64,000 nt of DNA from Macrostomum lignano (lineage: Eukaryota): contig NIVC01000834.1 in assembly GCA_002269645.1 (NCBI GenBank), positions 1-64,000 on the forward strand, written 5' to 3'. Within the stretch, counting starts at the first letter, position 1, and every line of letters begins with the position of its first letter. The notes under the pieces were generated by a model that had not been told where the DNA came from, ran no database searches, and saw only the letters and a list, made by a program, of their open reading frames with translations. Position numbers and translations under genes: made by a program. Below, piece by piece: positions 61 to 59,412 of the stretch.

Positions 61-33252
<33,192 letters not shown>

Positions 33253-35938: not shown

Positions 35939-38228
<2,290 letters not shown>

Positions 38229-39079
38229 GATGCCAATAAATTGCTGATTTCACAATTGCTAATAACTGACTCCCGAAAGATCGGCGCGCGCACCTTCTGG
38301 CTGAAAGCGTTTGAAAATTAGTTGAATCGTTATCATAATTCTTGATAAAATATACAACACTCTTAATAAGCTACTTATCAAGTAGAAATATAGGCTAAAT
38401 ATAATTTTTTTTAAAATGACGAACAAAATGTATTTTCAAAATTAAGAAATGCCGTCCAGGAAAAGAGATGTTATTATTGCTGATCAAAGTCAAACAGTGT
38501 GTGTGTTTTAGCTGCGCCACGACAAATTTGGCAGACGATTGAGCGCATAATAATAATGATAATAATAATAGTAATAATATAAAAATTGCTTTTACAATCA
38601 GAGCGTGGGGGCTGAGCGCACAGACAAAAATGACTGAGAGAAAAAAATCGAAAAAAAATAACAAAGAACAGTTGGGAGTTCCGGGAGGGGGAGGAGGATT
38701 TGGCGAACTCGAACTAATTCGACACAAAAACCTTATAAAAGCGCAAAGACTCGAGAGAATAAATGTGACTGAAAAGTGTTTGCAAGCCAGAAAAGTACAT
38801 TCATAAAACATAAAGCATAGGCAGTTCCGGTCAGATGTTTTCGAATGTTAATCGGGTACTTAAAAAAACTTTTTTATTTCTGTGTCAATTTTGTCAAGAG
38901 CAGAACTTTCAAATAGATGGAAAACGCACGGGGTAGAGCAGAGTATTAAAGATAGCTGGATAACAAAATAAACGCAAATGCGCGAAAAACTGCATCTAAA
39001 AGCATCGTAGACTGGATTTGAGCACGGAGTATTGATTTTTTCTTATCGGAGCATTTTTAGAAAAACTTGTGCATTTTTT

Positions 39080-39806
39080 ATGGAGACTTGATCGGCTCAT
39101 TGGGGAGACTTGATCAGCTCATTGGGGAGACTTGATCAGCTCATTAGGGAGACTTGATCAGCTCATTGGGGAGACTTGATCAGCTCATTAGGGAGACTTG
39201 ATCAGCTCATTAGGGAGACTTGATCAGCTCATTAGGGAGACTTGATCGGCTCATTTGGGAGACTGAAAAATTAGTCAATTAGTGACACTTGGACTATTTT
39301 ATTAAAGGGAGTAAGAACAGTCTATTAGGGAGACTAAAACCAGTCCATTAGGGAAACTCAGACCCGTCAATTAGGGAGACTAAGACCAGTCAATTAGGGA
39401 GACTAAGACCAATTCATTAGGGAGACTAAGACCAGTCGATTAGGGAGACTAAGACCAGTTCATTAGGGAGACTAAGACCAGTACATTAGGGAGACTAAGA
39501 GCAGTCCATTAGGGAGACTAAGACCAGTTCATTAGGGAGACTAAGACCAGTCCATTAGGGAGACTAAGAGCAGTCCATTAGGGAGACTAAGAGCAGTCCA
39601 TTAGGGAGACTAAGAGCAGTCCATTAGGGAGACTAAGACCAGTCCATTAGGGAGACTAAGAGCAGTTCATTAGGGAGACTAAGACCAGTCCATTCGGAGA
39701 CTAAGACCAGTCCATTCGGAGACTAAGACCAGTCCATTCGGAGACTAAGACCAGTCCATTCGGAGACTAAGACCAGTCCATTAGGAGACTAAGAGCAGTC
39801 CATTAG
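39080..39806. repeat. Two related 22/23-bp arrays (GGAGACTTGATCAGCTCATTAG; TTAGGGAGACTAAGACCAGTCCA) between the nucleoporin and PSMA5
   Basis: 39080-39262 and ~39330-39806. Confidence 0.92.
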
Positions 39807-39919
39807 GGAGATCAACCTATTAGAGATAATTAGAGTAGTCAATGATTAGACAAAATTTCAGCCTTAAAAGTCAGTCGAAGTGAGTGAACACGATCATAAA
39901 AGGTATTCATGTTTGCTTT

Positions 39920-42900
39920 TCACCGCCTTCGGCGCGGTTTAATCGGCGCCCGTCGAGTCGCTTCGCCAGCGCCGCCACCAGCCGCAGAGAAGTTGAAATT
40001 TGGCGCCGGCGCTTGCGGCGCAGCTCCAGCGACGGCCGCGCCAAGAGAGAAATTGAAGCTGGAACCACTGGATGACTGCTGCTGCTGATTCTGCTGTTGT
40101 TGCGGCGGCTGCTGTCCGAAGCTGAACAAAGAGCCGCCAGTTGAAGAAGTCGATCCAGCGGTAGCTGCCGACTGGCCAAACGTAAAGCCGGTGCCGGCGC
40201 TGGTTGAAGATGGTGGCGCATTTGGCGCGGCATTTGCAGCGCCGGAATTATTAGCGCCAAAACTAAAGCTGGGATTTGAGGCTGATTTGCCGAAACTGAA
40301 CGGATTGGGAGAAGCGGCGGCAGCCGGTTTTGCCACGGTGGACTGGTTGCTGCTCGCTGATTGGCCGAATAGGGTACCGGCTGATGACGTGTTCGAAACT
40401 GATTGGCCGAAAAGTAGACCAGTGGATGAGTTGCTCGAAGCTGATTGGCCGAAGACTGGAGCAGCGGATGACGTGTTCGAAGCTAATTGGCCGAAGACTG
40501 GAGCAGCGGATGACGTGTTCGAAGCTGATTGGCCGAAGACTGGAGCAGCGGATGACGTGTTCGAAGCTGATTGGCCAAAGACTGGAGCAGCGGATGACGT
40601 GTTCGAAGCTGATTGGCCAAAGACTGGAGCAGCGGATGACGCGTTAGAAGCTGATTGACCAAAAAGCGACGTTCCTGAAGACTTACTGACAGTGGAGGCA
40701 GCATGACCAAACAAATTATTGGCAGATGCGGTAGTGGCAACGGTCTGTCCGAAAACGGAGGAGCTCGATGATGCAACCGAAGATGCTTTACCAAAGGTGA
40801 ATGCACCGGATGTTGAAGATTTAGAAGCAGAGTAACCAAATGCGGAAGCCGTGGAAGCTGTAGTGGCAGCAGGTTGGCCAAATACGGAACTTGTGGAAGA
40901 AGCACTTTTACTAAATACGAATCCTGAACTAGCAGATGACACATTTGAACCCGACTGGCCGAAAATTGGTGCGGCAGATGACGCATTTGAAGCTGATTGG
41001 CCAAACACCGGACCAGCTGATGACGTGTTGGAAGCCGATTGGCCAAAGATTGGACCATTTGATGACGTGTTAGCAGCTGATTGGCCAAAGATCGGAGTGG
41101 CAGATGACGCATTTGAAGCTGATTGCCCAAACACTAGACCAGCTGATGACGCATTGGAAGCTGATTGGCCAAAGATTGGACCAGCCGTTGGCTTACTAGA
41201 AGCTGATTGGCCAAAGATTGGACCAGCTGATGACGTGTTGGAAGCTGATTGGCCAAAGATTGGACCAGCCGTTGGCTTACTAGAAGCTGATTGGCTAAAG
41301 ACGGGACCAGCTGATGACGTATTAGAATTTGATTGGCCGAAGACTGGAGCAGCAGATGACCTATTAGAAGCTGATTCGCCGAAGACTGGAGCAACAGATG
41401 ACGTGTAAGAAGCTGATTGGCCAAAAACTGGAGCAGCAGATGACGTATTAGAAGCTGATTGGCCAAAAACAGGAGCAGCAGATGACGTATTAGAAGCTGA
41501 TTGGCCGAATGCTGGAGCAGCAGATGACGTATTAGAAGCTGATTGGCCGAAAGCTGGAGCAGCAGATGACGTGCTCAAAGCTGATTGGCTGAACACAGGA
41601 GCAGTAGTAGAAGTTTGACCAAAGCCTGTAGCTGTAAAACTTGCAGAAGCATTATTATTAAAAGAAGAGTTTGAAGCAGCCAGGTTTAAACCTGATGCAG
41701 TAGTTGAGCCTAAAGCTGGTTGACTAATCACTGGAGCTACAGATGCAGCAGTAGACGCAGTGTTGGAAGCTGCCTGACCAAATGTTACAGCGGCAGACGG
41801 AGTGTTGGAAGCTGCCTGACCAAATGTTACAGCGGCAGACGGAGTGTTGGAAGCTGCCTGACCAAATGTTACAGCGGCAGACGGAGTGTTGGAAGCTGCC
41901 TGACCAAATGTTACAGCGGCAGACGGAGTGTTGGAAGCTGCCTGACCAAATGTTACAGCGGCAGACGGAGTGTTGGAAGCTGCCTGACCAAATGTTACAG
42001 CGGCAGACGGAGTGTTAAAAGCCGTTACAGTTGTCACAGGAGCTGACGTGTTCGAGGCTGCTGTAACTGACACGGAGTCTGCAGACGGGGTCTTGGAAAC
42101 TGTTTGGCCAAAGCTCACTGCTGCGGATGAAGTGTTGGTAGCTGTTATATTACTAGCAGTAGTTGGAGTTTCAGAAAAAGCGGTCCCCAGCACGGGAGCG
42201 TTGAGAGACGAAGTGTTAGAATCCGGCTTACGAAATTCTGCCAAAGGCGTTGCCGAAGCGGCAAGGTTCAGCACAGGTGCAGCGGCGGCAGCGGGCGTGC
42301 TAGGACTGCTATTCAACGAATTATTCGCCGCAGCTGCAGATTCTCCCGCAAGCAGGCGACGAATTCTTTCCCGACGACTGGCTCTGGCCTGACGGTCGCG
42401 TTCGCGAGCTTGCCGAGCGGCGGCCAGTCGGTCTATCGGTGAGGCGCCGCTCGGCATCGTCGACGAAAATTCCTCGCCGACGGTATCGCTGGCCGATACG
42501 GCGGCATCATCCCGACGCCTGCCGGAGCGCTCCAGGTTGGCGACCAGAGCGGAGACGGTAGCCCGAGCTGACGACTGCTGCTGGTGGTGCCTGCGACGCG
42601 CCGATGCCGACAATATCGAAGTCGACGAAATCGACGGCGAAGGCGAAACCAAACCGACATTGGTCGCTTCATCGACGCCGACTGTCGCAGTTGGTTCGGT
42701 ACTGGGCGTAACTGCCGCTAGTTGAAGCGGCGCGGCAGCAGGTCCGGAAGTATCTCGCTGCTCCGACGGCGCCGGCTCCGTCGCCGGAAGCGGCGGCGGC
42801 AAAATCCGCCTAGGCGCCACCGGAAGCCGAATTGGCCCGCCGCCGAGCACTTCGCGCAGCGACGTCGCTTTGAATTTGCCGCCGTCTAATCCGCCGCCAG

Positions 42901-43534
42901 ATTCCGACGTTGGTCCGGCTGCCGCGGCGGCGCCGCCACTAGACGAATCACCTAGGATGTCGTCAAGAGCAGCGGCGGCTGCTGCGTCGGCAGCGGGTGT
43001 CGCAGCGGCGATGCTGACACGTCGTCGCTTTTTCTTTGTCGAAAAAGAAGTCGCCGACGCGTCTTCAAAGTCGGCCCTATTCTCCACGTCCGGATTGACG
43101 TCCTCAGCAATGTCGGCTGCTTCCCCGCCGCCTTCTGCATCGTCGTTGTTGATGCTGGGCGGCGCCAGGGAGCGCCGTTTCCTGGTCTCGATGATGCGCA
43201 GGGCGCGCAGCACGCTGGTCTGCTCGTCCTCGTCTCGAAGCACTGGCTGCTGCTGCTGCTGCTGCTGCTGATGCGGCCTCGGCGGCAGCGGCATGGTGCA
43301 CCTACTGGGCGGTCCACGTTGAAACGGCGACTTCTTTGCCGACACTGATAGCTCTGTTGACGCCAACTGGCGGCTGGTGAGCACCGACGAAGTTGGCCGG
43401 CTGGCTGCAGTCGAAGAGGGCAGCAGGCCGACTGAGATGCTCGCCGGCGATTTGGTCGTCGCCGCGGCGGCGGCATCGGCAGCGGCGGCGGACCGCTTCG
43501 AGAAGCTGTAGTAGCCGGAGGCTCTCGGACGCAA
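39920..43534 (-). CDS. FG-repeat nucleoporin, nuclear-basket type (Nup153/POM121-like); single large exon with no own initiator ATG
   Basis: Stop-free 1204-codon frame. About 40 FG motifs (mostly [V/I/A/L]FGQ in 14-aa S/A/T/N-rich units; FSFG/FTFG near the end), an NLS-like KKKRRRVS, and a basic C-terminal tail RRAPIKPRRRR*. It begins right after a TTCCAG acceptor. No RanBP2-type zinc fingers or transmembrane segment seen. Confidence 0.8.
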   Translation of the reverse strand: MRPRASGYYSFSKRSAAAADAAAAATTKSPASISVGLLPSSTAASRPTSSVLTSRQLASTELSVSAKKSPFQRGPPSRCTMPLPPRPHQQQQQQQQPVLRDEDEQTSVLRALRIIETRKRRSLAPPSINNDDAEGGGEAADIAEDVNPDVENRADFEDASATSFSTKKKRRRVSIAAATPAADAAAAAALDDILGDSSSGGAAAAAGPTSESGGGLDGGKFKATSLREVLGGGPIRLPVAPRRILPPPLPATEPAPSEQRDTSGPAAAPLQLAAVTPSTEPTATVGVDEATNVGLVSPSPSISSTSILSASARRRHHQQQSSARATVSALVANLERSGRRRDDAAVSASDTVGEEFSSTMPSGASPIDRLAAARQARERDRQARASRRERIRRLLAGESAAAANNSLNSSPSTPAAAAAPVLNLAASATPLAEFRKPDSNTSSLNAPVLGTAFSETPTTASNITATNTSSAAVSFGQTVSKTPSADSVSVTAASNTSAPVTTVTAFNTPSAAVTFGQAASNTPSAAVTFGQAASNTPSAAVTFGQAASNTPSAAVTFGQAASNTPSAAVTFGQAASNTPSAAVTFGQAASNTASTAASVAPVISQPALGSTTASGLNLAASNSSFNNNASASFTATGFGQTSTTAPVFSQSALSTSSAAPAFGQSASNTSSAAPAFGQSASNTSSAAPVFGQSASNTSSAAPVFGQSASYTSSVAPVFGESASNRSSAAPVFGQSNSNTSSAGPVFSQSASSKPTAGPIFGQSASNTSSAGPIFGQSASSKPTAGPIFGQSASNASSAGLVFGQSASNASSATPIFGQSAANTSSNGPIFGQSASNTSSAGPVFGQSASNASSAAPIFGQSGSNVSSASSGFVFSKSASSTSSVFGQPAATTASTASAFGYSASKSSTSGAFTFGKASSVASSSSSVFGQTVATTASANNLFGHAASTVSKSSGTSLFGQSASNASSAAPVFGQSASNTSSAAPVFGQSASNTSSAAPVFGQSASNTSSAAPVFGQLASNTSSAAPVFGQSASSNSSTGLLFGQSVSNTSSAGTLFGQSASSNQSTVAKPAAAASPNPFSFGKSASNPSFSFGANNSGAANAAPNAPPSSTSAGTGFTFGQSAATAGSTSSTGGSLFSFGQQPPQQQQNQQQQSSSGSSFNFSLGAAVAGAAPQAPAPNFNFSAAGGGAGEATRRAPIKPRRRR
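41764..42018 (-). repeat. Coding 42-bp tandem repeat (TPSAAVTFGQAASN) x6 within the nucleoporin ORF
   Basis: Near-identical copies at the DNA level. Confidence 0.93.
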
Positions 43535-43574
43535 CTGGAATACGGAAATTTGCTTACGATTTATGATTGTGCTC

Positions 43575-44266
43575 AGCTAGGGATCAAAGAGACTCAATGG
43601 GAGTTACTCGGCTAGGGATCAAAGGGACTCAATGGGAGTTACTCAGCTAGGGATCAAAGGGACTCAATGGGATTTACTCAGCTAGGGATCAAAGGGACTC
43701 AATGGGAGTTACTCAGCTAGGGATCAAAGGGACTCAATGGGATTTACTCAGCTAGGGATCAAAGGGATTCAGTGAGATTTACTCAGCTAGGGATCAAGGG
43801 GATTCAATGGGATTTACTCAGCTAGGGATCAAAGGGACTCAATGGGATTTACTCAGCTAGGGATCAAGGGGATTCAATGGGATTTACTCAGCTAGGGATC
43901 AAAGGGACTCAATGGGATTTACTCAGCTAGGGATCAAAGGGACTCAATGGGATTTACTCAACTAGGGATCAAAGGGACTCAAAGGGATTTACTCAGCTAG
44001 GGATCAAAGGGATTCAGTGGGATTTACTCAGCTAGGAATCAAAGGGACTCAATGGGATTTACTCAGCTAGGGATCAAAGGGAATCAATGGGATTTACTCA
44101 GCTAGGGATCAAAAGGACTTAATGGGATTTACTCAGCTAGGGATCAAAGGGACTCAAAGGGATTTACTCAGCTAGGGATCAAAGGGATTCAGTGGTATTT
44201 ACTCAGCTAGGAATCAAAGGGACTCAATGGGATTTACTCAGCTAGGGATCAAAGGGATTCAATGGG
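43575..44266. repeat. 35-bp minisatellite ACTCAGCTAGGGATCAAAGGGACTCAATGGGATTT between rps3 and the nucleoporin
   Basis: About 20 copies. Confidence 0.96.
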
Positions 44267-44460
44267 GTACTAAGCATAATAGGACACGCCTACTAGTCGA
44301 TAGAATAACAAAGACAAACTATTAAACAAAGATTCCAAGCCAACAAACTTCCAGTCGCCAACTGCAATCAGTCTCTTTGCTCACAGAGACAAGCAAATTT
44401 ACTAATTTTAACCATAGTATTCATTGAAAGGTCCTCCAACGCAATCCTTCAACAGGCTGT

Positions 44461-47400
44461 TTAGGCCACGGCCATGACTTCAGCCTGAGGCTTCTGCTGC
44501 TTATTCTCCGAATAAGGCTCGGCCGGCACCGGCTGCTCTTTGGGATCGGCGATGGTCACGTGATCCGGCAGGGGCTTGCGGGGCGCGACGCCTCCAGCCG
44601 GGGCCTCCCAGTTCTGCATGATCTTCACCTGAGAGGAATTGAGATTGGAGTTAGTGAGTCGTACAGCGGTTCATACAGTGAGTCATACAGGAGTCATACA
44701 GTGAGTCAGACAAGAGTCATACAGTGAGTCATACACGAGTCATACACGAGTCATACACGAGTCATACAGTGAGTCATACAGTGAGTCATACAGTGAGTCA
44801 TACAGTGAGTCATACACGAGTCATACAGGAGTCATACAGGAGTCATACAGTGAGTCATACAGTGAGTCATACACGAGTCATACAGAAGTCATAACTGATA
44901 CAGTGAGTCAGATCAATAAGCCTCACCTGGATGCCCAGTACACCCTGCCGGAGCTGTACGTGCCGCACAGACCGGTCAATGAAGCGGACAGACGGCTCGC
45001 CGCTGTGGATCATGAAGCCTTCAGTGAATTTCATCGATTTGGCGCGCTGACCGCGCAGCTTGCCGCTAACAATGACTTCGGCGCCTTTGGCGCCAGACTC
45101 CATAATGAAGCGCAGCACGCCGTAGCAGGCGCGACGGACAGCCAGGCCACCGAGAAGCTTGTAGCGCAGGGACTCGGCCTGCATGGTTGGGTTGGCAGTT
45201 TGTTTTAGTAAAGAGGATTGGATTCTGCTAGTAGAGTGCAAGTTAGTTATGCCGTTTGGGGCAACATGACGGTAAATCGGTGACGCTGATTGATCTGGCG
45301 CCATCTGACGCTGATTGTTGATCTGGCGCCATCTAACACTGATTGATCTGGCGCCATCTGACACTGATTGATCTGGCGCCATCTGACGCTGATTGTTGAT
45401 CTGGCGCCATCTAACACTGATTGATCTGGCGCCATCTGACGCTGATTGTTGATCTGGCGCCATCTGACGCTGATTGTTGATCTGGCGCCATCTAACACTG
45501 ATTGATCTGGCGCCATCTGACGCTGATTAATCTGGCGCCATCTGACACTGATTGATCTGGCGCCATCTGACGCTGATTGATCAGGCGCCATCTGACGCTG
45601 ATATATCTGGCGCCATCTGACACTGATTGATCTGGCGCCATCTGACACTGATTGATCTGGCGCCATCTAACACTGATTGATCTAGCGCCATCTGACACTG
45701 ATTGATCTGGCGCCATCTAACACTGATTGATCTAGCGCCATCTGACACTGATTGATCTGGCGCCATCTAACACTGATTGATCTAGCGCCATCTGACACTG
45801 ATTGATCAGGCGCCATCTAGTACTTATGTTTGCTTTTAATTTAGTCTTGGCATCATACTTTTCTTAAATAGCTGTCGTCATAAGTTGGTACGAATGTGAA
45901 CAGCAGATATAGATGTTAAAATCATTGCCATTAGTACTAAAACTTAAAATTATTGGCTTATGAATTTACGAGTACATGTATGTTTGTAGTCAAGGACTGA
46001 ATGATGAGATTGGGATCGGGGGTGGGACTGAACTGAAGATGGTATCAGATAAGAGACTTAAGATGTGCTCATACAAAGCATGTTGCTGTCGTCATAGCTC
46101 AAATCTTTAAGGCTAACGAATGTGAACAGCAGTAATGCAATTTAATCATAGCTGCTCATATAAAACAACAAAATCATATTTTATGAAATCAATTCCAGTT
46201 GGCATCATACTGAACAATATGTTGTCGGCATAACTTGTACGAATGTGAACAGCAGAATGGTTATAATCACTGCCAACTTGGGAATTCACGGGAGATGGGA
46301 CTCGGGATGGGTCTGAGGATGGGACTGAGGATGGGTCTGAGGATGGGTCTGTGGATGGGACTGAGGATGGGTCTGAGGATGGGTCTGAGGATGGAACTGA
46401 GGATGGGACTGTGGATGGGACTGAGGATGGGTCTGAGGATGGGACTGAGGATGGTCTGAGGATGGGTCTGAGGATGGGACTGAGGGTGGGTCTGAGGGTG
46501 GGACTGAGGATGGTCTGAGGATGGGTCTGAGGATGGGACTGAGGGTGGCTCTGAGGGTGGGACTGAGGATGGGACAGAGGATGGGTCTGAGGATGGAACT
46601 GAGGATGGGTCTGAGGATGGGACGGAGGATGGGTCTGAGGATGGGACGGAGGATGGAACTGAGGATGGGTCTGAGGATGGGTCTGAGGATGGGTCTGAGG
46701 ATGGGACGGAGGATGGGACGGAGGATGGAACTGAGGATGGGTCTGAGGATGGGTCTGAGGATGGGACTGAGGATGGGACTGAGGGTGGGACGGAGGATTG
46801 GTCTGAGGATGGGACTGAGGGTGGGTCTGAGGGTGGGACTGAGGATGGGACAGAGGATGGGTCTGAGGATGGAACTGAGGATGGGTCTGAGGGTGGGACT
46901 GAGCATGGAACTGAGGATGGGTCTGAGGATGGGACGGAGGATGGGACGGAGGATGGGTCTGAGGATGGGACTGAGGATGGTCTGAGGATGGGTCTGAGGA
47001 TGGGACTGAGGGTGGCTCTGAGGGTGGGACTGAGGATGGGACAGAGGATGGGTCTGAGGATGGAACTGAGGATGGGTCTGAGGATGGGACGGAGGATGGG
47101 TCTGAGGATGGGACGGAGGATGGGACGGAGGATGGGTCTGAGGATGGGACTGAGGATGGTCTGAGGATGGGTCTGAGGATGGGACTGAGGGTGGCTCTGA
47201 GGGTGGGACTGAGGATGGGACAGAGGATGGGTCTGAGGTTGGAACTGAGGATGGGTCTGAGGATGGGACGGAGGATGGGTCTGAGGATGGGACGGAGGAT
47301 GGGACGGAGGATGGGTCTGAGGATGGGACTGAGGGTGGGACGGAGGATGGGACTGAGGGTGGGTCAGAGGATGGAACTGAGGATGGGACAGAGTTACAAA

Positions 47401-47751
47401 TGATAAAATCTGTCACCAAGGCAACGCTCAACCCACCTGTGCCACAGCGGACAGACCCCTGTTGGCCATCTTCTCCGCGTAGATTTCAATCTGGCCATCC
47501 TCGAAGCCGAATCGTTTCTGCAGCACAGCGGTGAGCTCGCGAACCTTGCGGCCCTTCTCGCCCAGCACGCTCTGGGTGCGGGTGGCCAGCACGATCACCT
47601 CGATCTTGGCCGGGGTCACGCGGAGCTCGATGCCCGAGTACCCGTCCTCGGCTAGTTCGCGCTTCAAGAATTCGTCCAGTTCGGCGCGGAACACGCCGTT
47701 GGCAACGAATGCCCGCTTCTTGCTCATCACAGCATTCTTGCTGGCGGCCAT
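44461..47751 (-). CDS. RPS3: 40S ribosomal protein S3 (uS3)
   Basis: Exons 47751-47437 ([29 protein letters not shown]...), 45178-44927 ([32 protein letters not shown]...), 44628-44461 ([19 protein letters not shown]). Phase-0 GT-AG introns; 244 aa. Confidence 0.97.
44668..44910. repeat. 12-bp repeat GAGTCATACAGT filling rps3 intron 2
   Basis: Direct inspection. Confidence 0.93.
45285..45819. repeat. 25/28-bp minisatellite TGATTGATCTGGCGCCATCTGACAC in rps3 intron 1
   Basis: About 21 copies. Confidence 0.95.
46066..46296. repeat. 231-bp dispersed cassette, copy in rps3 intron 1
   Basis: 2 mismatches seen versus 51811-52041 in the SIAH intron; both copies are followed by GAGGATGGGACT-type arrays. 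Confidence 0.85.
46290..47392. repeat. 12-bp repeat GAGGATGGGACT/GAGGATGGGTCT in rps3 intron 1
   Basis: About 90 units with higher-order block duplications. Confidence 0.96.
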
Positions 47752-47789
47752 GCTTGCATGCGGACAGTGGATACTCTTATTTAACCTGA

Positions 47790-48400
47790 CTCTTATCTCC
47801 CTACTGACTCTCCTTATTTCACTACAGACTGTTCTCATCTCTCCCCCTCCTGACTATCCCCCTACTGACTCTCCCCCTACTGACTATCCCCCTACTGACT
47901 CTCCCCTTACTGACTCTACCCCTACTGACTCTCCCCCTACTGACTCTCCCCCTACTGACTCTCAACTACTGATTTTGGTCTACTTACTCTCCTCATCTCC
48001 CTACTGACTCTCCTCATCTCCCTACTGACTCTCTCCCTACTGATTCTCCCCCTACTGACTATCCCCTACTGACTATCCCCTACTGACTCTCCCCCTACTG
48101 ACTATCCCCTACTGACTCTCCCCCTACTGACTATCCCCTACTGACTCTCCCCCTACTGACTATCCCCTACTGACTCCCCCCCTACTGACTATCCCCTACT
48201 CACTCATCCCCTACTTACTCTCCCCCTACTGACACCCCCTACTGACTCTCCCCCTACTGACTCTCTTCCTACTGACTCTCCCCCTACTGACTATCCCCTA
48301 CTGACTCTAACCCTACTGACTACCCCTACTGACTACCCCCTACTGACTCTCCCCCTACTGACTCTCCCCCTACTGACTCTCCCCAACCGACACTACCCCC
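47790..48400. repeat. 14-15-bp repeat CCCCCTACTGACTCT upstream of the rps3 ATG
   Basis: Direct inspection. Confidence 0.95.
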
Positions 48401-49461
48401 TACAGCCTGACAAGTGGCAGTAAAGGAGCCAAGAACCAAGTGTTGTCGCATAATGCAGAGCTTATAAATCTGCACTAGTTACTAAAAACAATTGCAACTT
48501 AAAGATTTAGGCGACAGCTTAACTGAAGACGCGTCTCGTTTTATTAAAAAATATTTTTCATATTTCCACTTCATATATAGAAAGTAAAAGGAGGGTTGCG
48601 GCTGTCAGATGTCTTAAGTCAAACAAAATGATATTAAGGGTCAAATTTAGGGAGAAAATAAGACGGTGACAGCTTCAGACACTGAATTGGTTTGCAGATA
48701 AGAGAGTTATTTAATAACAAAAAAGGCATTAACGATACAATGGGTTTGTACAACAGGATTAAAAGTAATAAACTACTGCCAGTAGCCGGGTTATAAGCTA
48801 TATATATTGCTACAGCACAAAGCAAAGACGAGACCCAAAGAAAATGTGCGAGTTCTGCCGCCCCACCCACGGACCGAAGCACCTGCACTCGCGCTGCACA
48901 CGCTCAATAGTGAATAATTAATAATCCGATTAATACATTTTTGCATACATTCTGTTCGAAAAACAACTTAATAAACACACGGCAGTGACACAAAACATGT
49001 GCGATAAACTATTATTGTACACAGAAGCAAACTAAATTAATATAGAGAGTAAATTTATAAATAAACATACAATCAATCACAATTTCTGTTGACAAATAAA
49101 GATTCTTAGCGGGGTCGCTAACCAGCGTCTGCGTGTTTCTAATAAAGTTGTCTAGCTAGAGAATGGACAAAGAAAAAAATTGACCTTGTTCGATGCACGT
49201 CTCAAGTTTTGTTCTCAATAGGAAAAAAATTGTCTCATGACGCTACTATTGAAGGGCTTCTACACGGATAAGTAGTGAGTTTAGGTGACGAGCTGAATAT
49301 TAATTCAATTTGTGTATTTTTTACAATGCAAAGCAAGAAGTCCACGAAATTGTACGATTTGGATGGCAGAGTGCGCGAGAAATATGCCGAAATAAAAGTA
49401 CTCATTGGAGTACGCGCGAACTCTTCACTGTCACATTTACAAGCATTTTGAGGGCCATGCT

Positions 49462-50401: not shown

Positions 50402-53339
50402 TCAGCCAATCTGCATGCCCTGACCGCAAATGGACGAACTCTGCTGCTGCTGCTGAGGCAAATCAGACGAAGAGTTTAATGATCCCGTAGCAACAGCGGC
50501 GCCTGTTGCCATGCTGATAGTCACGCTAATGCCCAGGTTGCCAGTCTCAGCGAACAGGGAGGCAATATTGGAATCGAATACCAGGCAGTCCGAGTTCGCA
50601 ATGGCGGCGTGCACGCCGTCGTGAATTGACCGCGGCGTCGCTTCCCAGGTGAGTCGGCGGCGTTGGCCATTGAGCTCGAGTCTGTAGGCGAACTGCTCCG
50701 CTTGCTTGCGGGTGCCAATGAGCTGCACGATGGCGTAGAACATCACCTGCAGTATAGGCGGGGTGGAGATGCTATTTGAGAAGATGAAAAGTTGGACAGT
50801 GGTGGTTAAGCTAGCTAACATCATGCTGTTGTGTAAATGAAGAAGAAACATAATGTAATGAGATGGGACTGGAGATGGGATCGGGTATGGGACTAGAGAT
50901 GGGATCGGGTATGGAACTGAAGATAGGATTAGGTTTGGGACTGGAGATGGGATCGGGTATGGGACTAGAGATGGGATCGGGTATGGGACTGAAGATGGAA
51001 TCGGGTATGGGACTGGAGATGGGATCGGGTATGGGACTGGAGATGGGATCGGGTATGGGACTGGGGGATGGGATCGGGTATAGAACTGAAGATGGGATCG
51101 GTTATGGAACTGGAGATGGGATCGGGTATGGGACTAGAGATGGGATCGGGTATGGGACTAGAGATGGGATCGGGTATGGGACTGGAGATGGGATCGGGTA
51201 TAAGACTGGAGATGGGATCGGGTATGGGACTGGGAGATGGGATCTGGGATCGGGTATGGGACTGGGAGATGGGATCTGGGATCGGGTATGGGACTGGAGA
51301 TGGGATCGGGTATAAGATTGGAAATGGGATCGGGTATGGGACTAGAGATGGGATCGGGTATAAGACTAGGGATGGGATCGGGTATGGGACTGGAGATGGG
51401 ATCGGGTATGGGACTGTAGATGGGATCGGGTATGGGACTGGAGATGGGATCGGGTATGGGACTGGAGATGGGATCGGGTATGGGACTGGAGATGGGATCG
51501 GGTATGGGACTGGAGATGGGATCGGGTATGGGACTGGGAGATGGGATCTGGGATCGGGTATGGGACTAGGGATAGGATCGGGTATGGGACTGGAGATGGG
51601 ATCGGGTATGGGACTGGGAGATGGGATATGGGATCGGGTATGGGACTGGGAGATGGGATCTGGGATCGGGTATGGGACTGGAGATAGGATCGGGTATGGG
51701 GACTGGGAGGTGGGATCTGGGATCGGGTCTGAAGATGGGATCTGGTATAGTATGGGAATGGAGAAAGGATCTGCAATGAGATCAGGTATGGGACTGAATA
51801 ACCTATTATTTGCTCATACAAAGCATGTTGCTGTCGTCATAGCTCAAATCTTTAAGGCTAACGAATGTGAACAGCAGTAATGCAATTTAATCATAGCTGC
51901 TCATATAAAACAACAAAATCATATTTTATGAAATCAATTCCAGTTGGCATCATACTGAACAATATGCTGTCGGCATAACTTGTACGAATGTGAACAGCAG
52001 AATGGTTATAATCACTGCCAACTTGGGAATTGACGGGAGATTTAGGATGAGACTGAGGGTGGGACTCAGGATGAGACTGAGGGTGGGACTCAGGATGGGA
52101 CTGAGGATGGAACTGAGGATGGAACTGAGGATGGGACTCAGGATGAGACTGAGGGTGGGACTCAGGATGAGACTGAGGGTGGGACTCAGGATGGGACTGA
52201 GGGTGGGACCGGGTATGGGACTGGAGATGGTATCGGGTATGTGACTGAAGATGGGATCGGGTATGGCACTGGAGATAGAACTAAAGATGGGATCGGGTAT
52301 GGCACTGGAGATGGGATCGGGTATGGGACTAAATATGGGATTTGGTATGGGACTGAAGATGGAATCGGGTATGGGACTGGAGATGTTGTCGGGTATGAAA
52401 CTGGAGATGGGGTCGGGTATGCGACTAAATGCATGACCAATCATCTGCTCATACAAGGCATGTCACTGCTATCATGGCTAAAATATTTTGAAAAGGAACA
52501 CACCGGATTGCGAGAGAGAAGAATGGCCCACTCACCTGACTATCCATTCTCTCCTGTTTCTCCAGCACAAGCATGAAATGATAGCCGAAGCAATTCTGCA
52601 TCATGACCCAATCCACCGCGCCGGGCAAATTAATATCAGTAGCTAAAAAGATGATATCTTCTCCCTGCAAAGTGGTGATGCTCTTGTGCTGCTGCGTGAG
52701 GTGCTGCATGACATTCTCAAGTGAGCCCTGCCATTTACAGCTGGCGCCAGGACAGGGACAAACGTACGGCCGGAACTCGCAGATCTCCTCGTGCTCAGCC
52801 TTAGCCGTGTGGTGAAACGCCGCCAGACAACCATTGCTAGCGTATTTGCACGGGAACTGTACCTGGGCGGCTAGGCGCTCCATAGCCAAGTTGCGAATAT
52901 TGGCCAGAGGCCCGCGACAGCTCGGACAGCTGGTGAGTTTAGCCCGGCAGTTTGAGCACACAATGTGACCAGCCTGGCACTGGATTACAGGGGGCAGGGC
53001 GTAGTCAAAGCACACTGGGCACTCGAATAGCGAGGCCAGTTCCATATTGTGCGCGGCCGAGTCTGCGGCGCTAGCGCCGGCGCCAACTAAAGACGCGGCG
53101 CCGGGCGTTAAGCCGGACGAAGAAGGCGAGGCGGCGAGGGCGGCGGCGGCAGCTGCGGCGGCGCCAATCATCTGCGGCAGCACTGGCACGGATTTGGCGC
53201 CGGCGCATCCAGCGGCGCTATCAGACTGTAATGGCGCCGGCCGACCAATTGGGGCGCCGGTGGTAGCGGCGGCGCTGCTGTTGCTATTCCTATAGTGAGC
53301 CGAGGCCTTCGACGAAGGGTGAACTTTGTTGCCATTCAT
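50402..53339 (-). CDS. SIAH1: E3 ubiquitin ligase SIAH/seven in absentia, full-length copy
   Basis: Exon 53339-52536 has the RING ([29 protein letters not shown]), zinc fingers and [21 protein letters not shown]. Exon 50746-50402 reads [55 protein letters not shown]. 382 aa from the first in-frame ATG. The paralog number cannot be assigned for an invertebrate. Confidence 0.93.
50860..52425. repeat. SIAH intron arrays: 24-bp GGGATCGGGTATGGGACTGGAGAT (50860-51796) and 12-bp GAGGATGGGACT-type/24-bp mix (52045-52425)
   Basis: Separated by the 231-bp cassette. Confidence 0.95.
51811..52041. repeat. 231-bp dispersed cassette, copy in SIAH intron (third copy 57884-58114 via the duplication)
   Basis: Starts TGCTCATACAAAGCATGTTG and ends GGAATT(C/G)ACGGGAGAT, as in 46066-46296. 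Confidence 0.85.
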
Positions 53340-54388
53340 TGTTGGCACTGGCAGTGTGCTCAATTATATAGGGCTGATTACTACTCGCAAAGCAGGAATG
53401 GTGGATTACACCACAGCATCCTGCATTTGGACCATGAGTTCTAAATTGGCACTCTGTATTTTATTCACTGTTTTTTTTTAATTTGAAGTATCAATAATTT
53501 TAAAATTATTAGGACTCTTGCAAGTTTAATACTTCAATCAATTGTCAAATCTATAAATATGTAAACTTCACTAGGTTTGAGGTATAGTAATATAAAATGA
53601 TAGGGCAAATATTTTATTTAATTTTAAAGTTTTGACTGCACCAGCAAGCAAGTTAGGTTTGAATTCGCCATCCTGACTTTGGACCTAAGATGCCAAATGT
53701 CACAGTGATTCTCAATGCTTAAATGGTGATTTTTGTAAATATCCAACATATATTGATCATTTGTTATGCAAGTAATACCTTGTAATACATTACAACCTTA
53801 TAGAGGTCAAGTTATTCTATACAAAAAACGGAATATAGGATTATAGTTTAATAATTGGATAGTTAAAATATTAAAAAATTATGGATAGAATTACTCATAG
53901 GAATATATACACTCAGTTAGAGTCAATATAAGAGTCAATAAAAGAAAACTTAGAACAGTATCCAGACTCCTTGGCATATAATAAATAGCAATGCTCGAAG
54001 TTAAACTATGAATTCTAGTAAAATATTGAGTGAATTAGTAGGATTAAATAACTGATTTAAACCTATGATAACACTGGTTGTAACATTAAAACAAAATTAT
54101 AAATAGTTAGACATGTCTTAATTACAAATAGTTAATACATAAATAACCCATTGGACAATATGATTTAATAAACCAATAGAATCAAGACTGTTACTCTTTT
54201 AATTGTGAGATTTGCATTGTAATTTATTAATCTTCTTTTCATTATCTAATTTTAAGATTTTAGGAATTTAAATCAAATGCAAATGCAGTCTTGCATTTAA
54301 GTTGGTAACCATCTAGGAAGAAATGTATTAAACCTGGCCAGTCCACTTAGCTTTAAATATAAGATTATAGAAATATATGTTACACATA

Positions 54389-56251: not shown

Positions 56252-59200
56252 TTATTTTAGTTGAGTATAATTAAAACAATATAAGCCCCTAGGATTTTGG
56301 TCTAAAAAACTGCTTTTTAGATAGGAAAAATTAGATAGGTCGTGAATTGACCGCGGCGTCGCTTCCCAGGTGAGTCGGCGGCGTTGGCCATTGAGCTCGA
56401 GTCTGTAGGCGAACTGCTCCGCTTGCTTGCGGGTGCCAATGAGCTGCACGATGGCGTAGAACATCACCTGCAGTATAGGCGGGGTGGAGATGCTATTTGA
56501 GAAGATGAAAAGTTGGACAGTGGTGGTTAAGCTAGCTAACATCATGCTGTTGTGTAAATGAAGAAGAAACATAATGTAATGAGATGGGACTGGAGATGGG
56601 ATCGGGTATGGGACTAGAGATGGGATCGGGTATGGAACTGAAGATAGGATTAGGTTTGGGACTGGAGATGGGATCGGGTATGGGACTAGAGATGGGATCG
56701 GGTATGGGACTGAAGATGGAATCGGGTATGGGACTGGAGATGGGATCGGGTATGGGACTGGAGATGGGATCGGGTATGGGACTGGGGGATGGGATCGGGT
56801 ATAGAACTGAAGATGGGATCGGTTATGGAACTGGAGATGGGATCGGGTATGGGACTAGAGATGGGATCGGGTATGGGACTAGAGATGGGATCGGGTATGG
56901 GACTGGAGATGGGATCGGGTATAAGACTGGAGATGGGATCGGGTATGGGACTGGGAGATGGGATCTGGGATCGGGTATGGGACTGGAGATGGGATCGGGT
57001 ATAAGATTGGAAATGGGATCGGGTATGGGACTAGAGATGGGATCGGGTATAAGACTAGGGATGGGATCGGGTATGGGACTGGAGATGGGATCGGGTATGG
57101 GACTGTAGATGGGATCGGGTATGGGACTGGAGATGGGATCGGGTATGGGACTGGAGATGGGATCGGGTATGGGACTGGAGATGGGATCGGGTATGGGACT
57201 GGAGATGGGATCGGGTATGGGACTGGGAGATGGGATCTGGGATCGGGTATGGGACTAGGGATAGGATCGGGTATGGGACTGGAGATGGGATCGGGTATGG
57301 GACTGGGAGATGGGATCTGGGATCGGGTATGGGACTGGGAGATGGGATCTGGGATCGGGTATGGGACTGGAGATGGGATCGGGTATAAGATTGGAAATGG
57401 GATCGGGTATGGGACTAGAGATGGGATCGGGTATAAGACTAGGGATGGGATCGGGTATGGGACTGGAGATGGGATCGGGTATGGGACTGTAGATGGGATC
57501 GGGTATGGGACTGGAGATGGGATCGGGTATGGGACTGGAGATGGGATCGGGTATGGGACTGGAGATGGGATCGGGTATGGGACTGGAGATGGGATCGGGT
57601 ATGGGACTGGGAGATGGGATCTGGGATCGGGTATGGGACTAGGGATAGGATCGGGTATGGGACTGGAGATGGGATCGGGTATGGGACTGGGAGATGGGAT
57701 CTGGGATCGGGTATGGGACTGGGAGATGGGATCTGGGATCGGGTATGGGACTGGAGATAGGATCGGGTATGGGGACTGGGAGGTGGGATCTGGGATCGGG
57801 TCTGAAGATGGGATCTGGTATAGTATGGGAATGGAGAAAGGATCTGCAATGAGATCAGGTATGGGACTGAATAACCTATTATTTGCTCATACAAAGCATG
57901 TTGCTGTCGTCATAGCTCAAATCTTTAAGGCTAACGAATGTGAACAGCAGTAATGCAATTTAATCATAGCTGCTCATATAAAACAACAAAATCATATTTT
58001 ATGAAATCAATTCCAGTTGGCATCATACTGAACAATATGCTGTCGGCATAACTTGTACGAATGTGAACAGCAGAATGGTTATAATCACTGCCAACTGGGG
58101 AATTGACGGGAGATTTAGGATGAGACTGAGGGTGGGACTCAGGATGAGACTGAGGGTGGGACTCAGGATGGGACTGAGGATGGAACTGAGGATGGAACTG
58201 AGGATGGGACTCAGGATGAGACTGAGGGTGGGACTCAGGATGAGACTGAGGGTGGGACTCAGGATGGGACTGAGGGTGGGACCGGGTATGGGACTGGAGA
58301 TGGTATCGGGTATGTGACTGAAGATGGGATCGGGTATGGCACTGGAGATAGAACTAAAGATGGGATCGGGTATGGCACTGGAGATGGGATCGGGTATGGG
58401 ACTAAATATGGGATTTGGTATGGGACTGAAGATGGAATCGGGTATGGGACTGGAGATGTTGTCGGGTATGAAACTGGAGATGGGGTCGGGTATGCGACTA
58501 AATGCATGACCAATCATCTGCTCATACAAGGCATGTCACTGCTATCATGGCTAAAATATTTTGAAAAGGAACACACCGGATTGCGAGAGAGAAGAATGGC
58601 CCACTCACCTGACTATCCATTCGCTCCTGTTTCTCCAGCACAAGCATGAAATGATAGCCGAAGCAATTCTGCATCATGACCCAATCCACCGCGCCGGGCA
58701 AATTAATATCAGTAGCTAAAAAGATGATATCTTCTCCCTGCAAAGTGGTGATGCTCTTGTGCTGCTGCGTGAGGTGCTGCATGACATTCTCAAGTGAGCC
58801 CTGCCATTTACAGCTGGCGCCAGGACAGGGACAAACGTACGGCCGGAACTCGCAGATCTCCTCGTGCTCAGCCTTAGCCGTGTGGTGAAACGCCGCCAGA
58901 CAACCATTGCTAGCGTATTTGCACGGGAACTGTACCTGGGCGGCTAGGCGCTCCATAGCCAAGTTGCGAATATTGGCCAGAGGCCCGCGACAGCTCGGAC
59001 AGCTGGTGAGTTTAGCCCGGCAGTTTGAGCACACAATGTGACCAGCCTGGCACTGGATTACAGGGGGCAGGGCGTAGTCAAAGCACACTGGGCACTCGAA
59101 TAGCGAGGCCAGTTCCATATTGTGCGCGGCCGAGTCTGCGGCGCTAGCGCCGGCGCCAACTAAAGACGCGGCGCCGGGCGTTAAGCCGGACGAAGAAGGC

Positions 59201-59412
59201 GAGGCGGCGAGGGCGGCGGCGGCAGCTGCGGCGGCGCCAATCATCTGCGGCAGCACTGGCACGGATTTGGCGCCGGCGCATCCAGCGGCGCTATCAGACT
59301 GTAATGGCGCCGGCCGACCAATTGGGGCGCCGGTGGTAGCGGCGGCGCTGCTGTTGCTATTCCTATAGTGAGCCGAGGCCTTCGACGAAGGGTGAACTTT
59401 GTTGCCATTCAT
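56252..59412 (-). pseudogene. SIAH1: Duplicated SIAH copy truncated in exon 2 (open frame, last 71 aa replaced by 28 unrelated aa)
   Basis: Exon 59412-58609 translates identically to copy 1. Exon 2 starts at 56467 and breaks after TPRSIHD at 56339, then reads LSNFSYLK...TQLK to a stop at 56252. Confidence 0.8.
56581..58498. repeat. Duplicated SIAH intron arrays, 352 bp longer than in copy 1
   Basis: The offset between copies jumps from 5721 to 6073 across the array. Confidence 0.93.

What the first reader, a model, noticed from the sequence alone, without database searches (positions are those of the whole stretch)
43500..44461. 1204-codon ORF that lacks an ATG and opens exactly at a splice acceptor: spliced-leader AUG as start codon?
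Seen: ...CAAATTTCCGTATTCCAG|TTG CGT CCG... The frame is phase 0 from the first base after AG. The first in-frame Met is ~80 codons later, and an out-of-frame ATG comes first. Upstream there is only a 35-mer array and the rps3 3' end, where I found no ATG-containing exon with a phase-0 donor. Known: flatworm spliced leaders end in AUG, and in Schistosoma this AUG can act as the initiator Met. Inference: SL addition gives M-LRPRASGYY..., making translation dependent on trans-splicing. Alternative: both rps3 donors (47437 and 44927) are phase 0, so cis-splicing to 43534 would give an in-frame Rps3-nucleoporin fusion.
Basis: partly seen in the sequence, partly recalled or inferred. Interest (0 to 1): 0.82.

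Follow-up and report, generated by a model that had tools for sequence, protein, structure and literature searches.

The report
Flatworm nucleoporin gene started by spliced-leader AUG
In the flatworm Macrostomum lignano, a nuclear-pore protein gene just downstream of ribosomal protein gene rps3 has no start codon of its own and most likely borrows the AUG at the end of the trans-spliced leader, which is a known flatworm mechanism, so this is a clean new example and not a new phenomenon.

Summary
On the minus strand, TTCCAG|TTG at 43534 opens a 1204-codon FG-nucleoporin ORF. The first in-frame ATG is codon 81, and an out-of-frame ATG (43476) comes before it. Upstream lie only a 35-mer array and the end of rps3.

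The window is Macrostomum lignano Mlig_3_7 contig NIVC01000834.1. This species' 35-nt spliced leader ends in ATG. Its trans-splice acceptor motif, [T/C]TNCAG, sits exactly at 43540-43535. The deposited annotation starts the nucleoporin CDS at 43534, with no Met. That is the start expected for a transcript model cut at an SL site.

The new evidence is a diverged paralogous locus (33% protein identity). It keeps the rps3-nucleoporin pair, keeps the acceptor, and has a genomic ATG exactly where the window has TTG: MRRRATGYYSFSKRSA against LRPRASGYYSFSKRSA. The differences are mostly synonymous. So the extreme N-terminus is translated, and Met81 is very unlikely as the start.

SL trans-splicing with the SL AUG as initiator is therefore well supported, in an operon-like rps3-nucleoporin pair. 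I saw no SL-junction read and no protein evidence.

The mechanism is already known (Cheng et al. 2006, Schistosoma). I rate this a new member of a known kind, of modest interest.

The parts
47437..47751 (-). rps3 exon 1 (ATG at 47751-47749; phase-0 donor CAG|GTGGGT)
   Evidence: The spliced product has KH_2 and Ribosomal_S3_C domains. It is 100% identical to NCBI BOX15_Mlig008787g3.
44927..45178 (-). rps3 exon 2 (phase-0 donor CAG|GTGAGG)
44461..44628 (-). rps3 exon 3, with stop TAA at 44463-44461
   Evidence: The annotated CDS ends at 44461.
44398..44403 (-). AGTAAA, the only poly(A)-signal-like hexamer before the array. This is the likely 3' end region of rps3.
   Evidence: That it acts as a poly(A) signal is inferred, not shown.
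43572..44266 (-). 35-nt minisatellite (19.9 copies) filling 695 of the 926 nt between rps3 and the nucleoporin. It contains no ATG.
   Evidence: The repeat-adjusted intergenic distance is 231 nt.
43577..43579 (-). In-frame TAG, 14 codons upstream of the acceptor
43535..43540 (-). TTCCAG, the trans-splice acceptor. It matches the M. lignano SL-acceptor motif [T/C]TNCAG.
   Evidence: The motif is from PMC8629364. It is conserved as TTTCAG in the paralogous locus.
39920..43534 (-). Single-exon 1204-codon ORF encoding an FG-repeat nucleoporin with an orphan N-terminal ~450 aa. The annotated CDS has these same limits.
43487..43534 (-). Codons 1-16 (LRPRASGYYSFSKRSA), the most conserved block between the two paralogues. 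Codon 1 is TTG here and ATG in the paralogue.
43495..43497 (-). AG|C of TTCTCGAAG|CGG, a second phase-0 acceptor-like site. It is equivalent to the annotated CDS start of the paralogue.
   Evidence: Its use in this copy is not indicated by the annotation.
43474..43476 (-). First genomic ATG after the acceptor. It is out of frame and opens a 174-codon ORF.
43292..43294 (-). First in-frame genomic ATG (codon 81)
44413..44424 (-). ATGAATACTATG followed by GTTAAA, the only upstream ATG with a phase-0 GT. Judged to be a chance match.

Best explanation
rps3 and the FG-nucleoporin gene form an operon-like, same-strand pair. Transcription reads from rps3 through the minisatellite-filled spacer. The nucleoporin mRNA is then made by trans-splicing the 35-nt M. 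lignano spliced leader onto the acceptor TTCCAG| at 43534.

The leader ends in AUG and the exon starts in phase 0, so the mature mRNA reads ...UUGCAUG|UUG CGU CCG.... The SL AUG is the first AUG on the mRNA and is the initiator, giving M-LRPRASGYYSFSKRS....

The gene itself has no usable start codon. The codon after the acceptor is TTG, where the paralogue still has ATG. Translation of the full protein therefore depends on trans-splicing.

Shown here: the anatomy, the species, the acceptor motif, the annotated 5' limit, and protein-level conservation of the N-terminal peptide.

Inferred: the polycistronic precursor, actual SL addition at this base, and initiation at the SL AUG.
For: 1. Species and leader. 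The window is GCA_002269645.1 contig NIVC01000834.1. The SL ends in ATG (PMC8629364), and Macrostomum workers have noted that ATG as a start codon (PMC10468722). A Logan RNA contig shows ...TACTGCGAAGACTCAATTTATTGCATG joined to an rps3 5'UTR.
2. Acceptor. TTCCAG fits the [T/C]TNCAG motif enriched at 9551 SL acceptors.
3. Annotation. Both assembly copies (L001, L002) carry a CDS starting at the first base after AG, with no Met. The other CDS ranges in the locus (PSMA5, rps3) show that these are CDS limits. An in-frame TAG lies 14 codons upstream, so in my reading of how such ORFs are called, an ATG-less ORF starting here requires a transcript model that begins at 43534-43536. That is what the authors' SL-peak-based TBONE cutting produces.
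4. Paralogue L003/L005. rps3 has diverged by K of about 0.53 at 4-fold sites and the nucleoporin is 33% identical. Yet TTTCAG|ATG CGG CGC CGC GCC ACA GGC TAT TAC AGC TTC TCA AAG CGG aligns codon for codon with the window. The result is 8 identical, 5 synonymous (including AGA/CGC Arg) and 3 non-synonymous codons. 7 of the 11 base differences are at third positions. The 60 nt upstream align only at the acceptor.
5. Codon usage is positive from the acceptor onwards and negative upstream.
6. A scanning ribosome that skipped the SL AUG would meet the out-of-frame ATG at 43476 before Met81.
7. Operon criteria. The genes are on the same strand, and the repeat-adjusted spacer is 231 nt, under the 1 kb threshold of PMC8629364. 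The rps3-nucleoporin synteny is kept in the old paralogous locus, whereas the annotated flanking genes differ.
8. Precedent. In S. mansoni the SL AUG is in frame in 28% of trans-spliced transcripts, and more than 40 cDNAs need it as start codon (Cheng et al. 2006, as summarised in PMC9851317).
9. TTG is not an assembly error. L001 and L002 are identical over 1527 nt here. The independent ML2-based model P0001 reads ...D-C-V-R, that is GA|T TGC GTC CGA, which requires T at 43534.
Against: - I saw no read, cDNA or contig with the SL joined at 43534. Exact look-ups for M+ORF products found nothing, and homology searches returned only the fused model P0001.
- The SL AUG has a weak context (U at -3, U at +4).
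- In the paralogue the annotated CDS starts 13 codons further down (AAG|CGG, 11747). That start would drop the conserved motif, so site usage may be heterogeneous. The equivalent site exists here at 43495.
- The annotated product is 1120 aa, not 1204, so the deposited model has an unexplained 252-nt gap in the FG repeats.
- The third-position excess is only about p = 0.04 (my own binomial calculation on the sequences).
Confidence: 0.78

Rival explanations
1. Translation starts at the first genomic in-frame AUG (codon 81, 43294). Codons 1-80 are 5'UTR that merely happens to be open.
For: This is the only in-frame genomic ATG in the first 370 codons. An 80-codon open stretch in roughly 65% GC sequence is not rare by itself.
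Against: Codons 1-16 are the best conserved block between paralogues that share only 33% identity, and the substitution pattern is mostly synonymous. Codon usage is coding-like in this frame only. The SL AUG and the out-of-frame AUG at 43476 both precede Met81. The paralogue has no Met at the aligned position.
Confidence: 0.07
2. The SL is added mainly at the downstream phase-0 site AAG|CGG (43495), as annotated for the paralogue. The SL AUG still initiates, but the protein begins M-RSAAAAD... and lacks the GYYSFSK motif.
For: The paralogue's deposited CDS begins at the equivalent AAG|CGG in two assembly copies. The same AG|CGG is present in the window.
Against: Both annotated copies of this gene start at 43534, not 43495. 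AAG does not fit [T/C]TNCAG. The motif upstream of that site is under protein-level constraint.
Confidence: 0.08
3. The acceptor at 43534 is used in cis from an rps3 donor (47437 or 44927, both phase 0), giving an Rps3(N-terminal)-nucleoporin fusion as the functional product.
For: All three sites are phase 0, so fusions would be in frame. An older gene model (UniProt A0A1I8FFD9, P0001) fuses rps3 to this ORF at the same acceptor. Parasitic flatworms often share acceptors between cis- and trans-splicing (PMC12582326).
Against: P0001 comes from a frameshift-ridden assembly. It uses a donor inside rps3 exon 3 that is not GT in this sequence (GA|AGTCAT; my reading). The current annotation keeps two separate genes in all four loci. 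rps3 has its own complete three-exon CDS and stop. Phase-0 agreement is expected by chance about one time in three.
Confidence: 0.03
4. A conventional 5' exon with its own ATG lies upstream (for example ATG|GTTAAA at 44415-44413, or beyond rps3) and is cis-spliced to 43534.
For: One ATG followed by a phase-0 GT exists in the spacer.
Against: Its donor does not fit GT[G/A]AG. It sits inside the probable rps3 3'UTR. The rest of the spacer is an ATG-free satellite. The paralogue has nothing equivalent and instead has ATG directly after the acceptor. The annotation has no such exon.
Confidence: 0.02
5. Near-cognate initiation occurs at the UUG codon itself (43534-43532), on a trans-spliced or unspliced RNA.
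For: UUG is the most used non-AUG start in SL-bearing nematode mRNAs (PMC9851317). The bacterial-code tools here list this ORF as TTG-started, but that is an artefact of translation table 11.
Against: On the trans-spliced mRNA an AUG sits immediately 5' and in frame, so it would normally be used first. On the precursor the UUG is internal, about 3-4 kb from the cap.
Confidence: 0.02

Closest known systems
Flatworm SL 3'-terminal AUG used as initiator methionine (Cheng, Cohen, Ndegwa & Davis 2006, J Biol Chem 281:733; Schistosoma mansoni). Also called 'slORFs' (PMC9851317).
   Same: The SL ends in AUG. The acceptor is in phase 0 with a long ORF that has no genomic start codon. The SL AUG becomes the first, in-frame AUG of the mRNA.
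   Different: The species is a free-living, early-branching macrostomid. I found no systematic description of SL-AUG-dependent ORFs in Macrostomum, only a figure-legend remark (PMC10468722). This case also has an internal control: a paralogue with a genomic ATG at the same codon. Translation from the SL AUG is not demonstrated here, whereas Cheng et al. tested it experimentally.
M. lignano operons resolved by SL trans-splicing (Wudarski et al. 2017, PMC5730564; Ustyantsev & Berezikov 2021, PMC8629364)
   Same: Same-strand neighbours. The spacer is dominated by simple repeats, and the repeat-adjusted distance is under 1 kb. The downstream gene begins at a [T/C]TNCAG acceptor.
   Different: I could not see the polycistronic precursor or the authors' own operon call for this pair. 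The shared 'Mlig008787' prefix is a sequence-cluster name, not an operon identifier.
FG-repeat nucleoporins (Pfam PF13634)
   Same: About 750 residues of xFGQ-type repeats score 4.3e-28 against Nucleoporin_FG. There is a short basic C-terminal tail (...RRAPIKPRRRR). From memory, that tail resembles the Nup153 C-terminus; I did not test this.
   Different: The N-terminal ~450 aa has no detectable relative outside M. lignano: phmmer against 1.84 billion representatives, Pfam and a PDB profile search all found nothing. No zinc fingers, beta-propeller or coiled-coil domain was detected, so no orthology to a named nucleoporin can be claimed.

Membership tests
SL-AUG-initiated flatworm mRNA (slORF) | The organism's spliced leader ends in AUG | tested here: met
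   The species was identified as M. lignano. The published SL ends in ATG. The same SL 3' end is seen on a Logan RNA contig.
SL-AUG-initiated flatworm mRNA (slORF) | The SL is actually spliced onto the acceptor at the first base of the ORF | tested here: inconclusive
   The evidence is indirect. The motif matches. The deposited CDS, from a pipeline that cuts at SL-read peaks, starts exactly at 43534 in two assembly copies. No junction read or cDNA was seen.
SL-AUG-initiated flatworm mRNA (slORF) | The SL AUG is in frame with the ORF, with no intervening stop | tested here: met
   SL...ATG + TTG CGT CCG translates as MLRPRASGYY....
SL-AUG-initiated flatworm mRNA (slORF) | There is no genomic in-frame AUG upstream of conserved coding sequence, so the SL AUG is required | tested here: met
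   The first in-frame ATG is codon 81. Codons 2-16 are conserved at protein level in a paralogue that is 33% identical overall.
SL-AUG-initiated flatworm mRNA (slORF) | Translation initiates at the SL AUG | not testable with these tools
   This needs ribosome profiling, N-terminal proteomics or a reporter assay.
M. lignano SL-resolved operon | Adjacent same-strand genes with a repeat-adjusted intergenic distance under 1 kb (criterion of PMC8629364) | tested here: met
   926 nt minus the 695-nt array leaves 231 nt.
M. lignano SL-resolved operon | The downstream gene is SL trans-spliced | tested here: inconclusive
   Same indirect evidence as above.
M. lignano SL-resolved operon | A polycistronic precursor spans both genes | not testable with these tools
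   No RNA-seq coverage or long-read cDNA is available here. Conserved rps3-nucleoporin adjacency in the paralogous locus is consistent with it but is not proof.
FG nucleoporin | FG-repeat region recognised by PF13634 above the gathering score | tested here: met
   98.4 bits against a cut-off of 32.2, in 8 stretches.
FG nucleoporin | Orthology to a named nucleoporin through a structured or anchoring domain | tested here: not met
   There were no hits for the N-terminal 450 aa.

The most novel reading that the evidence does not exclude
After an old duplication of the rps3-nucleoporin pair, one nucleoporin copy lost its own ATG (ATG to TTG at the first codon after the acceptor), or the other copy gained one. 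The cause would be that the in-frame SL AUG made the genomic start codon redundant. The window copy would then be strictly dependent on trans-splicing for translation of a conserved N-terminal motif (GYYSFSKRS) in a lineage-specific nucleoporin. That nucleoporin may be the trans-spliced, neoblast-enriched 'Nucleoporin FG repeat region' gene listed in PMC5816591, but this identity is unverified. If so, it would be a natural experiment on start-codon transfer from gene to spliced leader, testable in a transgenic flatworm model.
Probability: 0.55. Interest if true: 0.42.

Novelty: new member of a known kind. Interest (0 to 1): 0.3.

Why it matters
SL-AUG initiation has been demonstrated in schistosomes. 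It is generally treated as a possibility in other flatworms, and annotation pipelines, including the one used for this genome, simply leave such genes as '5'-partial' proteins without a methionine.

This locus is a clear example from a free-living, genetically tractable flatworm. It comes with a built-in evolutionary control, a paralogue that keeps ATG at the same codon. It shows that ATG-less 'partial' CDSs that start in phase 0 at SL acceptors should be completed with the SL methionine.

It does not reveal a new mechanism.

Tried and rejected
- Exact look-ups of the ORF, of M+ORF, of the paralogue's ORF and of P0001 in the gene-position and protein collections found nothing.
- A homology search with low-complexity stretches masked as X returned nothing, not even P0001, and was wasted.
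- phmmer of the N-terminal 450 aa against 1.84 billion representatives and a two-sequence profile against the PDB gave no relatives. The nucleoporin could therefore not be assigned to a named family.
- No SL RNA gene is present in the window.
- I tried to reconstruct the annotated 1120-aa product as a single 252/294-nt gap common to L001 and L002. This gave 141 candidate sequences and no GT-AG solution, and I abandoned it.
- My first codon-usage run used mis-framed rps3 exons, and the next included a mis-framed PSMA5 exon. Only one search should be used.
- I first read 'Mlig008787g3' as 'third gene of a transcriptional unit'. That is wrong: the prefix is a 95%-identity cluster name, so the names say nothing about operon membership.
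- SIAH was checked as a possible second ATG-less gene. It has an ordinary ATG.
- Supplement searches for this locus' gene identifiers found nothing. The 'Mlig006501.g1/Mlig031049.g1' FG-nucleoporin entry could not be tied to this locus.

Full report
**What is in the sequence.**

Everything relevant is on the minus strand. A three-exon rps3 gene occupies 47751-47437, 45178-44927 and 44628-44461, with KH_2 and Ribosomal_S3_C domains. A 926-nt spacer follows. Of that spacer, 695 nt is a 35-nt minisatellite at 43572-44266 with 19.9 copies.

The spacer ends in ...ccgtaTTCCAG|TTG CGT CCG. From 43534 a single frame stays open for 1204 codons, down to a TGA ending at 39920. The protein has an N-terminal ~450 residues with no repeats, followed by ~750 residues of FG repeats (Nucleoporin_FG, E = 4.3e-28).

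The first in-frame ATG is codon 81 (43294). The only earlier ATG, at 43476, is out of frame and opens a 174-codon ORF.

- The frame is already open for 14 ATG-less codons before the acceptor. The in-frame TAG is at 43579-43577.
- One ATG with a phase-0 GT does exist in the spacer (ATGAATACTATG|GTTAAA, 44424-44413). Its donor does not fit the species consensus, and it lies just past the rps3 stop.

**Is it more than chance?**

Among 408 YTNCAG sites on both strands of the window, 43534 is the only one followed by a phase-0 ORF of more than 300 codons.

I built a codon-usage log-odds score from 807 codons of rps3, SIAH and the middle of this ORF. For codons 1-80 it gives +6.0 bits in the ORF frame, against -23.7 and -11.6 in the other frames. 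None of 2000 shuffles reached the observed value. The 240 nt upstream of the acceptor score between -76 and -91 in all frames. The coding signal therefore begins at the acceptor.

**Whose genome.**

The N-terminal region found a single database protein, UniProt A0A1I8FFD9 of Macrostomum lignano. A search with the rps3 product then found NCBI proteins BOX15_Mlig008787g3 (100% identical) and BOX15_Mlig030908g1 (95%).

Fetching their loci showed that the window is contig NIVC01000834.1 of GCA_002269645.1 (Mlig_3_7), reversed, with L001 position 14215 equal to window 43534. A second assembly copy (L002, NIVC01001502.1) is identical over the spacer and the first 600 nt of the ORF. It differs by one 42-nt FG repeat unit.

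**What is known about this species.**

- M. lignano has one 35-nt spliced leader, CGGTCTCTTACTGCGAAGACTCAATTTATTGCATG, which ends in ATG.
- Operon spacers are often inflated by simple repeats, and the authors use a repeat-adjusted distance under 1 kb as their criterion.
- The top motif at SL acceptors is [T/C]TNCAG, and cis donors are GT[G/A]AG (PMC8629364).
- The annotation pipeline (TBONE) cuts transcriptional units at peaks of SL-trimmed reads and then calls ORFs with TransDecoder (PMC5730564).
- Workers on other Macrostomum genomes noted in a figure legend that the SL's final ATG is a translation start codon (PMC10468722).
- All reported flatworm SLs end in AUG (PMC12582326).
- In S. mansoni the SL AUG is in frame in 28% of trans-spliced transcripts, and more than 40 cDNAs need it as the start (Cheng et al. 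2006, as summarised in PMC9851317).

I could not read Cheng et al. itself.

**How the locus fits.**

The acceptor TTCCAG matches [T/C]TNCAG exactly. The repeat-adjusted spacer is 231 nt.

The deposited annotation lists four same-strand genes: SIAH, rps3, the nucleoporin and PSMA5. The nucleoporin range is L001 14215-17829, which is window 43534-39920. The PSMA5 range starts at its ATG and the rps3 range ends at its stop codon, so these are CDS limits.

An ATG-less CDS that begins exactly at 43534 is informative because an in-frame TAG lies only 14 codons upstream. In my reading of how such ORFs are called, the transcript model must start at 43534-43536, which is the position of an SL cut. This is indirect evidence that the authors' SL reads pile up at this acceptor. 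I did not see the reads.

A Logan RNA contig (SRR30276804) carrying the last 27 nt of the SL joined to an rps3 5'UTR shows what such junctions look like in public data. No contig for the nucleoporin 5' end could be retrieved.

**The paralogue, the most informative result.**

The second rps3 type lies in a different locus (L003, NIVC01001130.1). An identical copy is L005, on NIVC01000087.1. The two rps3 types differ at 38% of 4-fold sites (K of about 0.53), so the duplication is old.

There too, rps3 is followed on the same strand by an FG nucleoporin. The spacer is 353 nt and has no array. The annotated flanking genes differ between the two loci.

The two nucleoporins are only 33% identical overall, with a few conserved islands. 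The best conserved island is the extreme N-terminus:
- Paralogue: tcaTTTCAG|ATG CGG CGC CGC GCC ACA GGC TAT TAC AGC TTC TCA AAG CGG TCA GCC (MRRRATGYYSFSKRSA)
- Window: TTCCAG|TTG CGT CCG AGA GCC TCC GGC TAC TAC AGC TTC TCG AAG CGG TCC GCC (LRPRASGYYSFSKRSA)

Of the 16 codons, 8 are identical, 5 differ synonymously (including AGA/CGC for Arg) and 3 change the residue. 7 of the 11 base differences are at third positions (binomial p of about 0.04, my calculation). The 60 nt upstream align only at the acceptor itself.

The peptide is therefore under protein-level constraint and must be translated. The acceptor position is conserved. The window copy has TTG exactly where the paralogue has ATG.

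With the SL attached, the paralogue would read M-M-R-R-R... and the window copy M-L-R-P-R.... The SL AUG makes the genomic ATG dispensable, and in the window copy it is the only AUG available upstream of the conserved peptide.

The T at 43534 is not an assembly error. Two Mlig_3_7 contigs agree. The older ML2-based model reads ...D-C-V-R, that is GA|T TGC GTC CGA.

**Complications.**

- The paralogue's deposited CDS starts 13 codons further down, at AAG|CGG (also phase 0 and also ATG-less). That start would remove the conserved motif. If TBONE cuts at every SL peak, a gene with two SL sites would be annotated from the downstream one, so both sites may be in use there. The equivalent AG|CGG exists in the window at 43495, but the annotation does not use it.
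- The annotated products for L001 and L002 are 1120 aa, not 1204 and 1218. This implies 252-nt and 294-nt gaps inside the 42-nt FG repeats. I could not reconstruct them, and no GT-AG solution exists. A collapsed de novo transcript mapped to the genome is my guess.
- Neither complication affects the 5' end.

**Rivals.**

- *Initiation at Met81.* This is contradicted by the conserved N-terminal peptide, the codon-usage signal, the two AUGs that precede Met81 on the trans-spliced mRNA, and the absence of a Met at the aligned position in the paralogue.
- *A cis-spliced Rps3-nucleoporin fusion.* It is in frame from either donor, and a fused model exists (P0001). But that model comes from a frameshift-ridden assembly and uses a donor that is not GT in this sequence. 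The current annotation separates the genes in all four loci. A minor fusion isoform cannot be excluded.
- *A conventional upstream ATG exon.* The only candidate is a weak chance-level match.
- *UUG initiation.* This is unnecessary when an in-frame AUG sits immediately 5'. The 'TTG start' and the 'M' printed by the ORF listing and align_proteins are artefacts of the bacterial code.

**What the protein is.**

It is an FG nucleoporin by its repeats. Its N-terminal 450 residues have no detectable relative outside M. lignano.

The conserved islands between the paralogues are GYYSFSKRS, SVLRxLRIxExRKR, FKATSLxEVL, TVSALVA and RQARERxRQ...RIRRLLA. They mark a lineage-specific anchoring region.

A supplementary table of neoblast genes lists a 'non-conserved', TRANSSPLICED gene pair whose only Pfam match is Nucleoporin FG repeat (Mlig006501.g1/Mlig031049.g1, PMC5816591). 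It may be this gene, but I could not link the identifiers.

**Verdict.**

The mechanism has been known since 2006, the SL ATG has been remarked on in Macrostomum, and the public annotation already places the CDS start at this base.

What this work adds is the identification of the locus, the paralogue comparison (ATG against TTG at the same codon under a conserved acceptor), and the exclusion of Met81. I rate it a new member of a known kind, of modest interest. It would gain somewhat as a tractable natural experiment on start-codon loss under cover of the SL.

Noticed in passing
window 47746-47760 (rps3 5' end); P0002, P0122: The deposited rps3 CDS (BOX15_Mlig008787g3, 'partial') starts at GCC 47748, immediately after the genomic ATG, although no AG precedes that base. 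A second model (g1) starts one codon before the ATG. The genomic ...aaGCATG|GCC shares GCATG with the SL 3' end, and a possible acceptor is caAG|CATGG. Over-trimming of a repeated GCATG in SL reads would explain the odd boundary. If the SL joins at AG|CATGG, the SL AUG is out of frame with rps3.
   Followed up: partly
L003 9990-10010 and 10310-10940: The paralogous rps3 is annotated from CAC ATG, just after CTTCAG|C. There the SL AUG would open a 5-codon uORF (MPHGN*) overlapping the real start. This copy also lacks the second intron, and its first intron begins GCAAGT, which looks like a GC-AG intron.
   Followed up: partly
window 52449-53363 and 58522-59436: There are two identical copies of the first exon of a SIAH (seven-in-absentia) E3 ligase gene, about 6.07 kb apart, with identical flanking minisatellites. 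This is either a tandem duplication or an assembly duplication. L002 shows only one SIAH gene within the fetched 10-kb flank.
   Followed up: no
window 39098-39811, 44653-44893, 45281-45818, 46294-47393, 47839-48403: Nearly every intron and spacer around these genes is filled with its own minisatellite: 23-mer x31, 12-mer x21, 25-mer x21, 12-mer x92 and 15/29-mer x39. The paralogous locus lacks the intergenic array and has a much shorter rps3 gene, 1354 nt against 3291 nt.
   Followed up: no
window 43678-44238: 16 of the ~20 copies of the 35-mer array carry AGTAAA, a poly(A)-signal variant, embedded in GA|GTAAAT, which also looks like a 5' splice site. Whether this matters for 3'-end formation of rps3 or for processing of the outron is unknown.
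   Followed up: no
window 39920-43534 vs L002 14203-17859: The two assembly copies of the nucleoporin differ by one 42-nt FG repeat unit. Both are annotated with the same 1120-aa product, 84 and 98 codons shorter than the uninterrupted ORFs. This suggests the deposited model carries an artefactual gap in the repeats.
   Followed up: partly
window 38228-38310: PSMA5 (proteasome alpha subunit, ATG at 38228) is preceded by cgcTTTCAG|CCAGAAGG about 75 nt upstream. That is a motif-perfect SL acceptor. An SL AUG there would open a 14-codon uORF ending before the real ATG. About 0.8 kb of AT-rich non-repeat sequence upstream could equally hold its own promoter.
   Followed up: no
L004 1-60 (Logan SRR30276804): An RNA contig from another Macrostomum sample or paralogue shows the SL 3' 27 nt joined to an rps3 5'UTR. 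The SL AUG there is followed by AGG GTC TGA, a 3-codon uORF. So rps3 itself is trans-spliced with a non-initiating SL AUG.
   Followed up: partly
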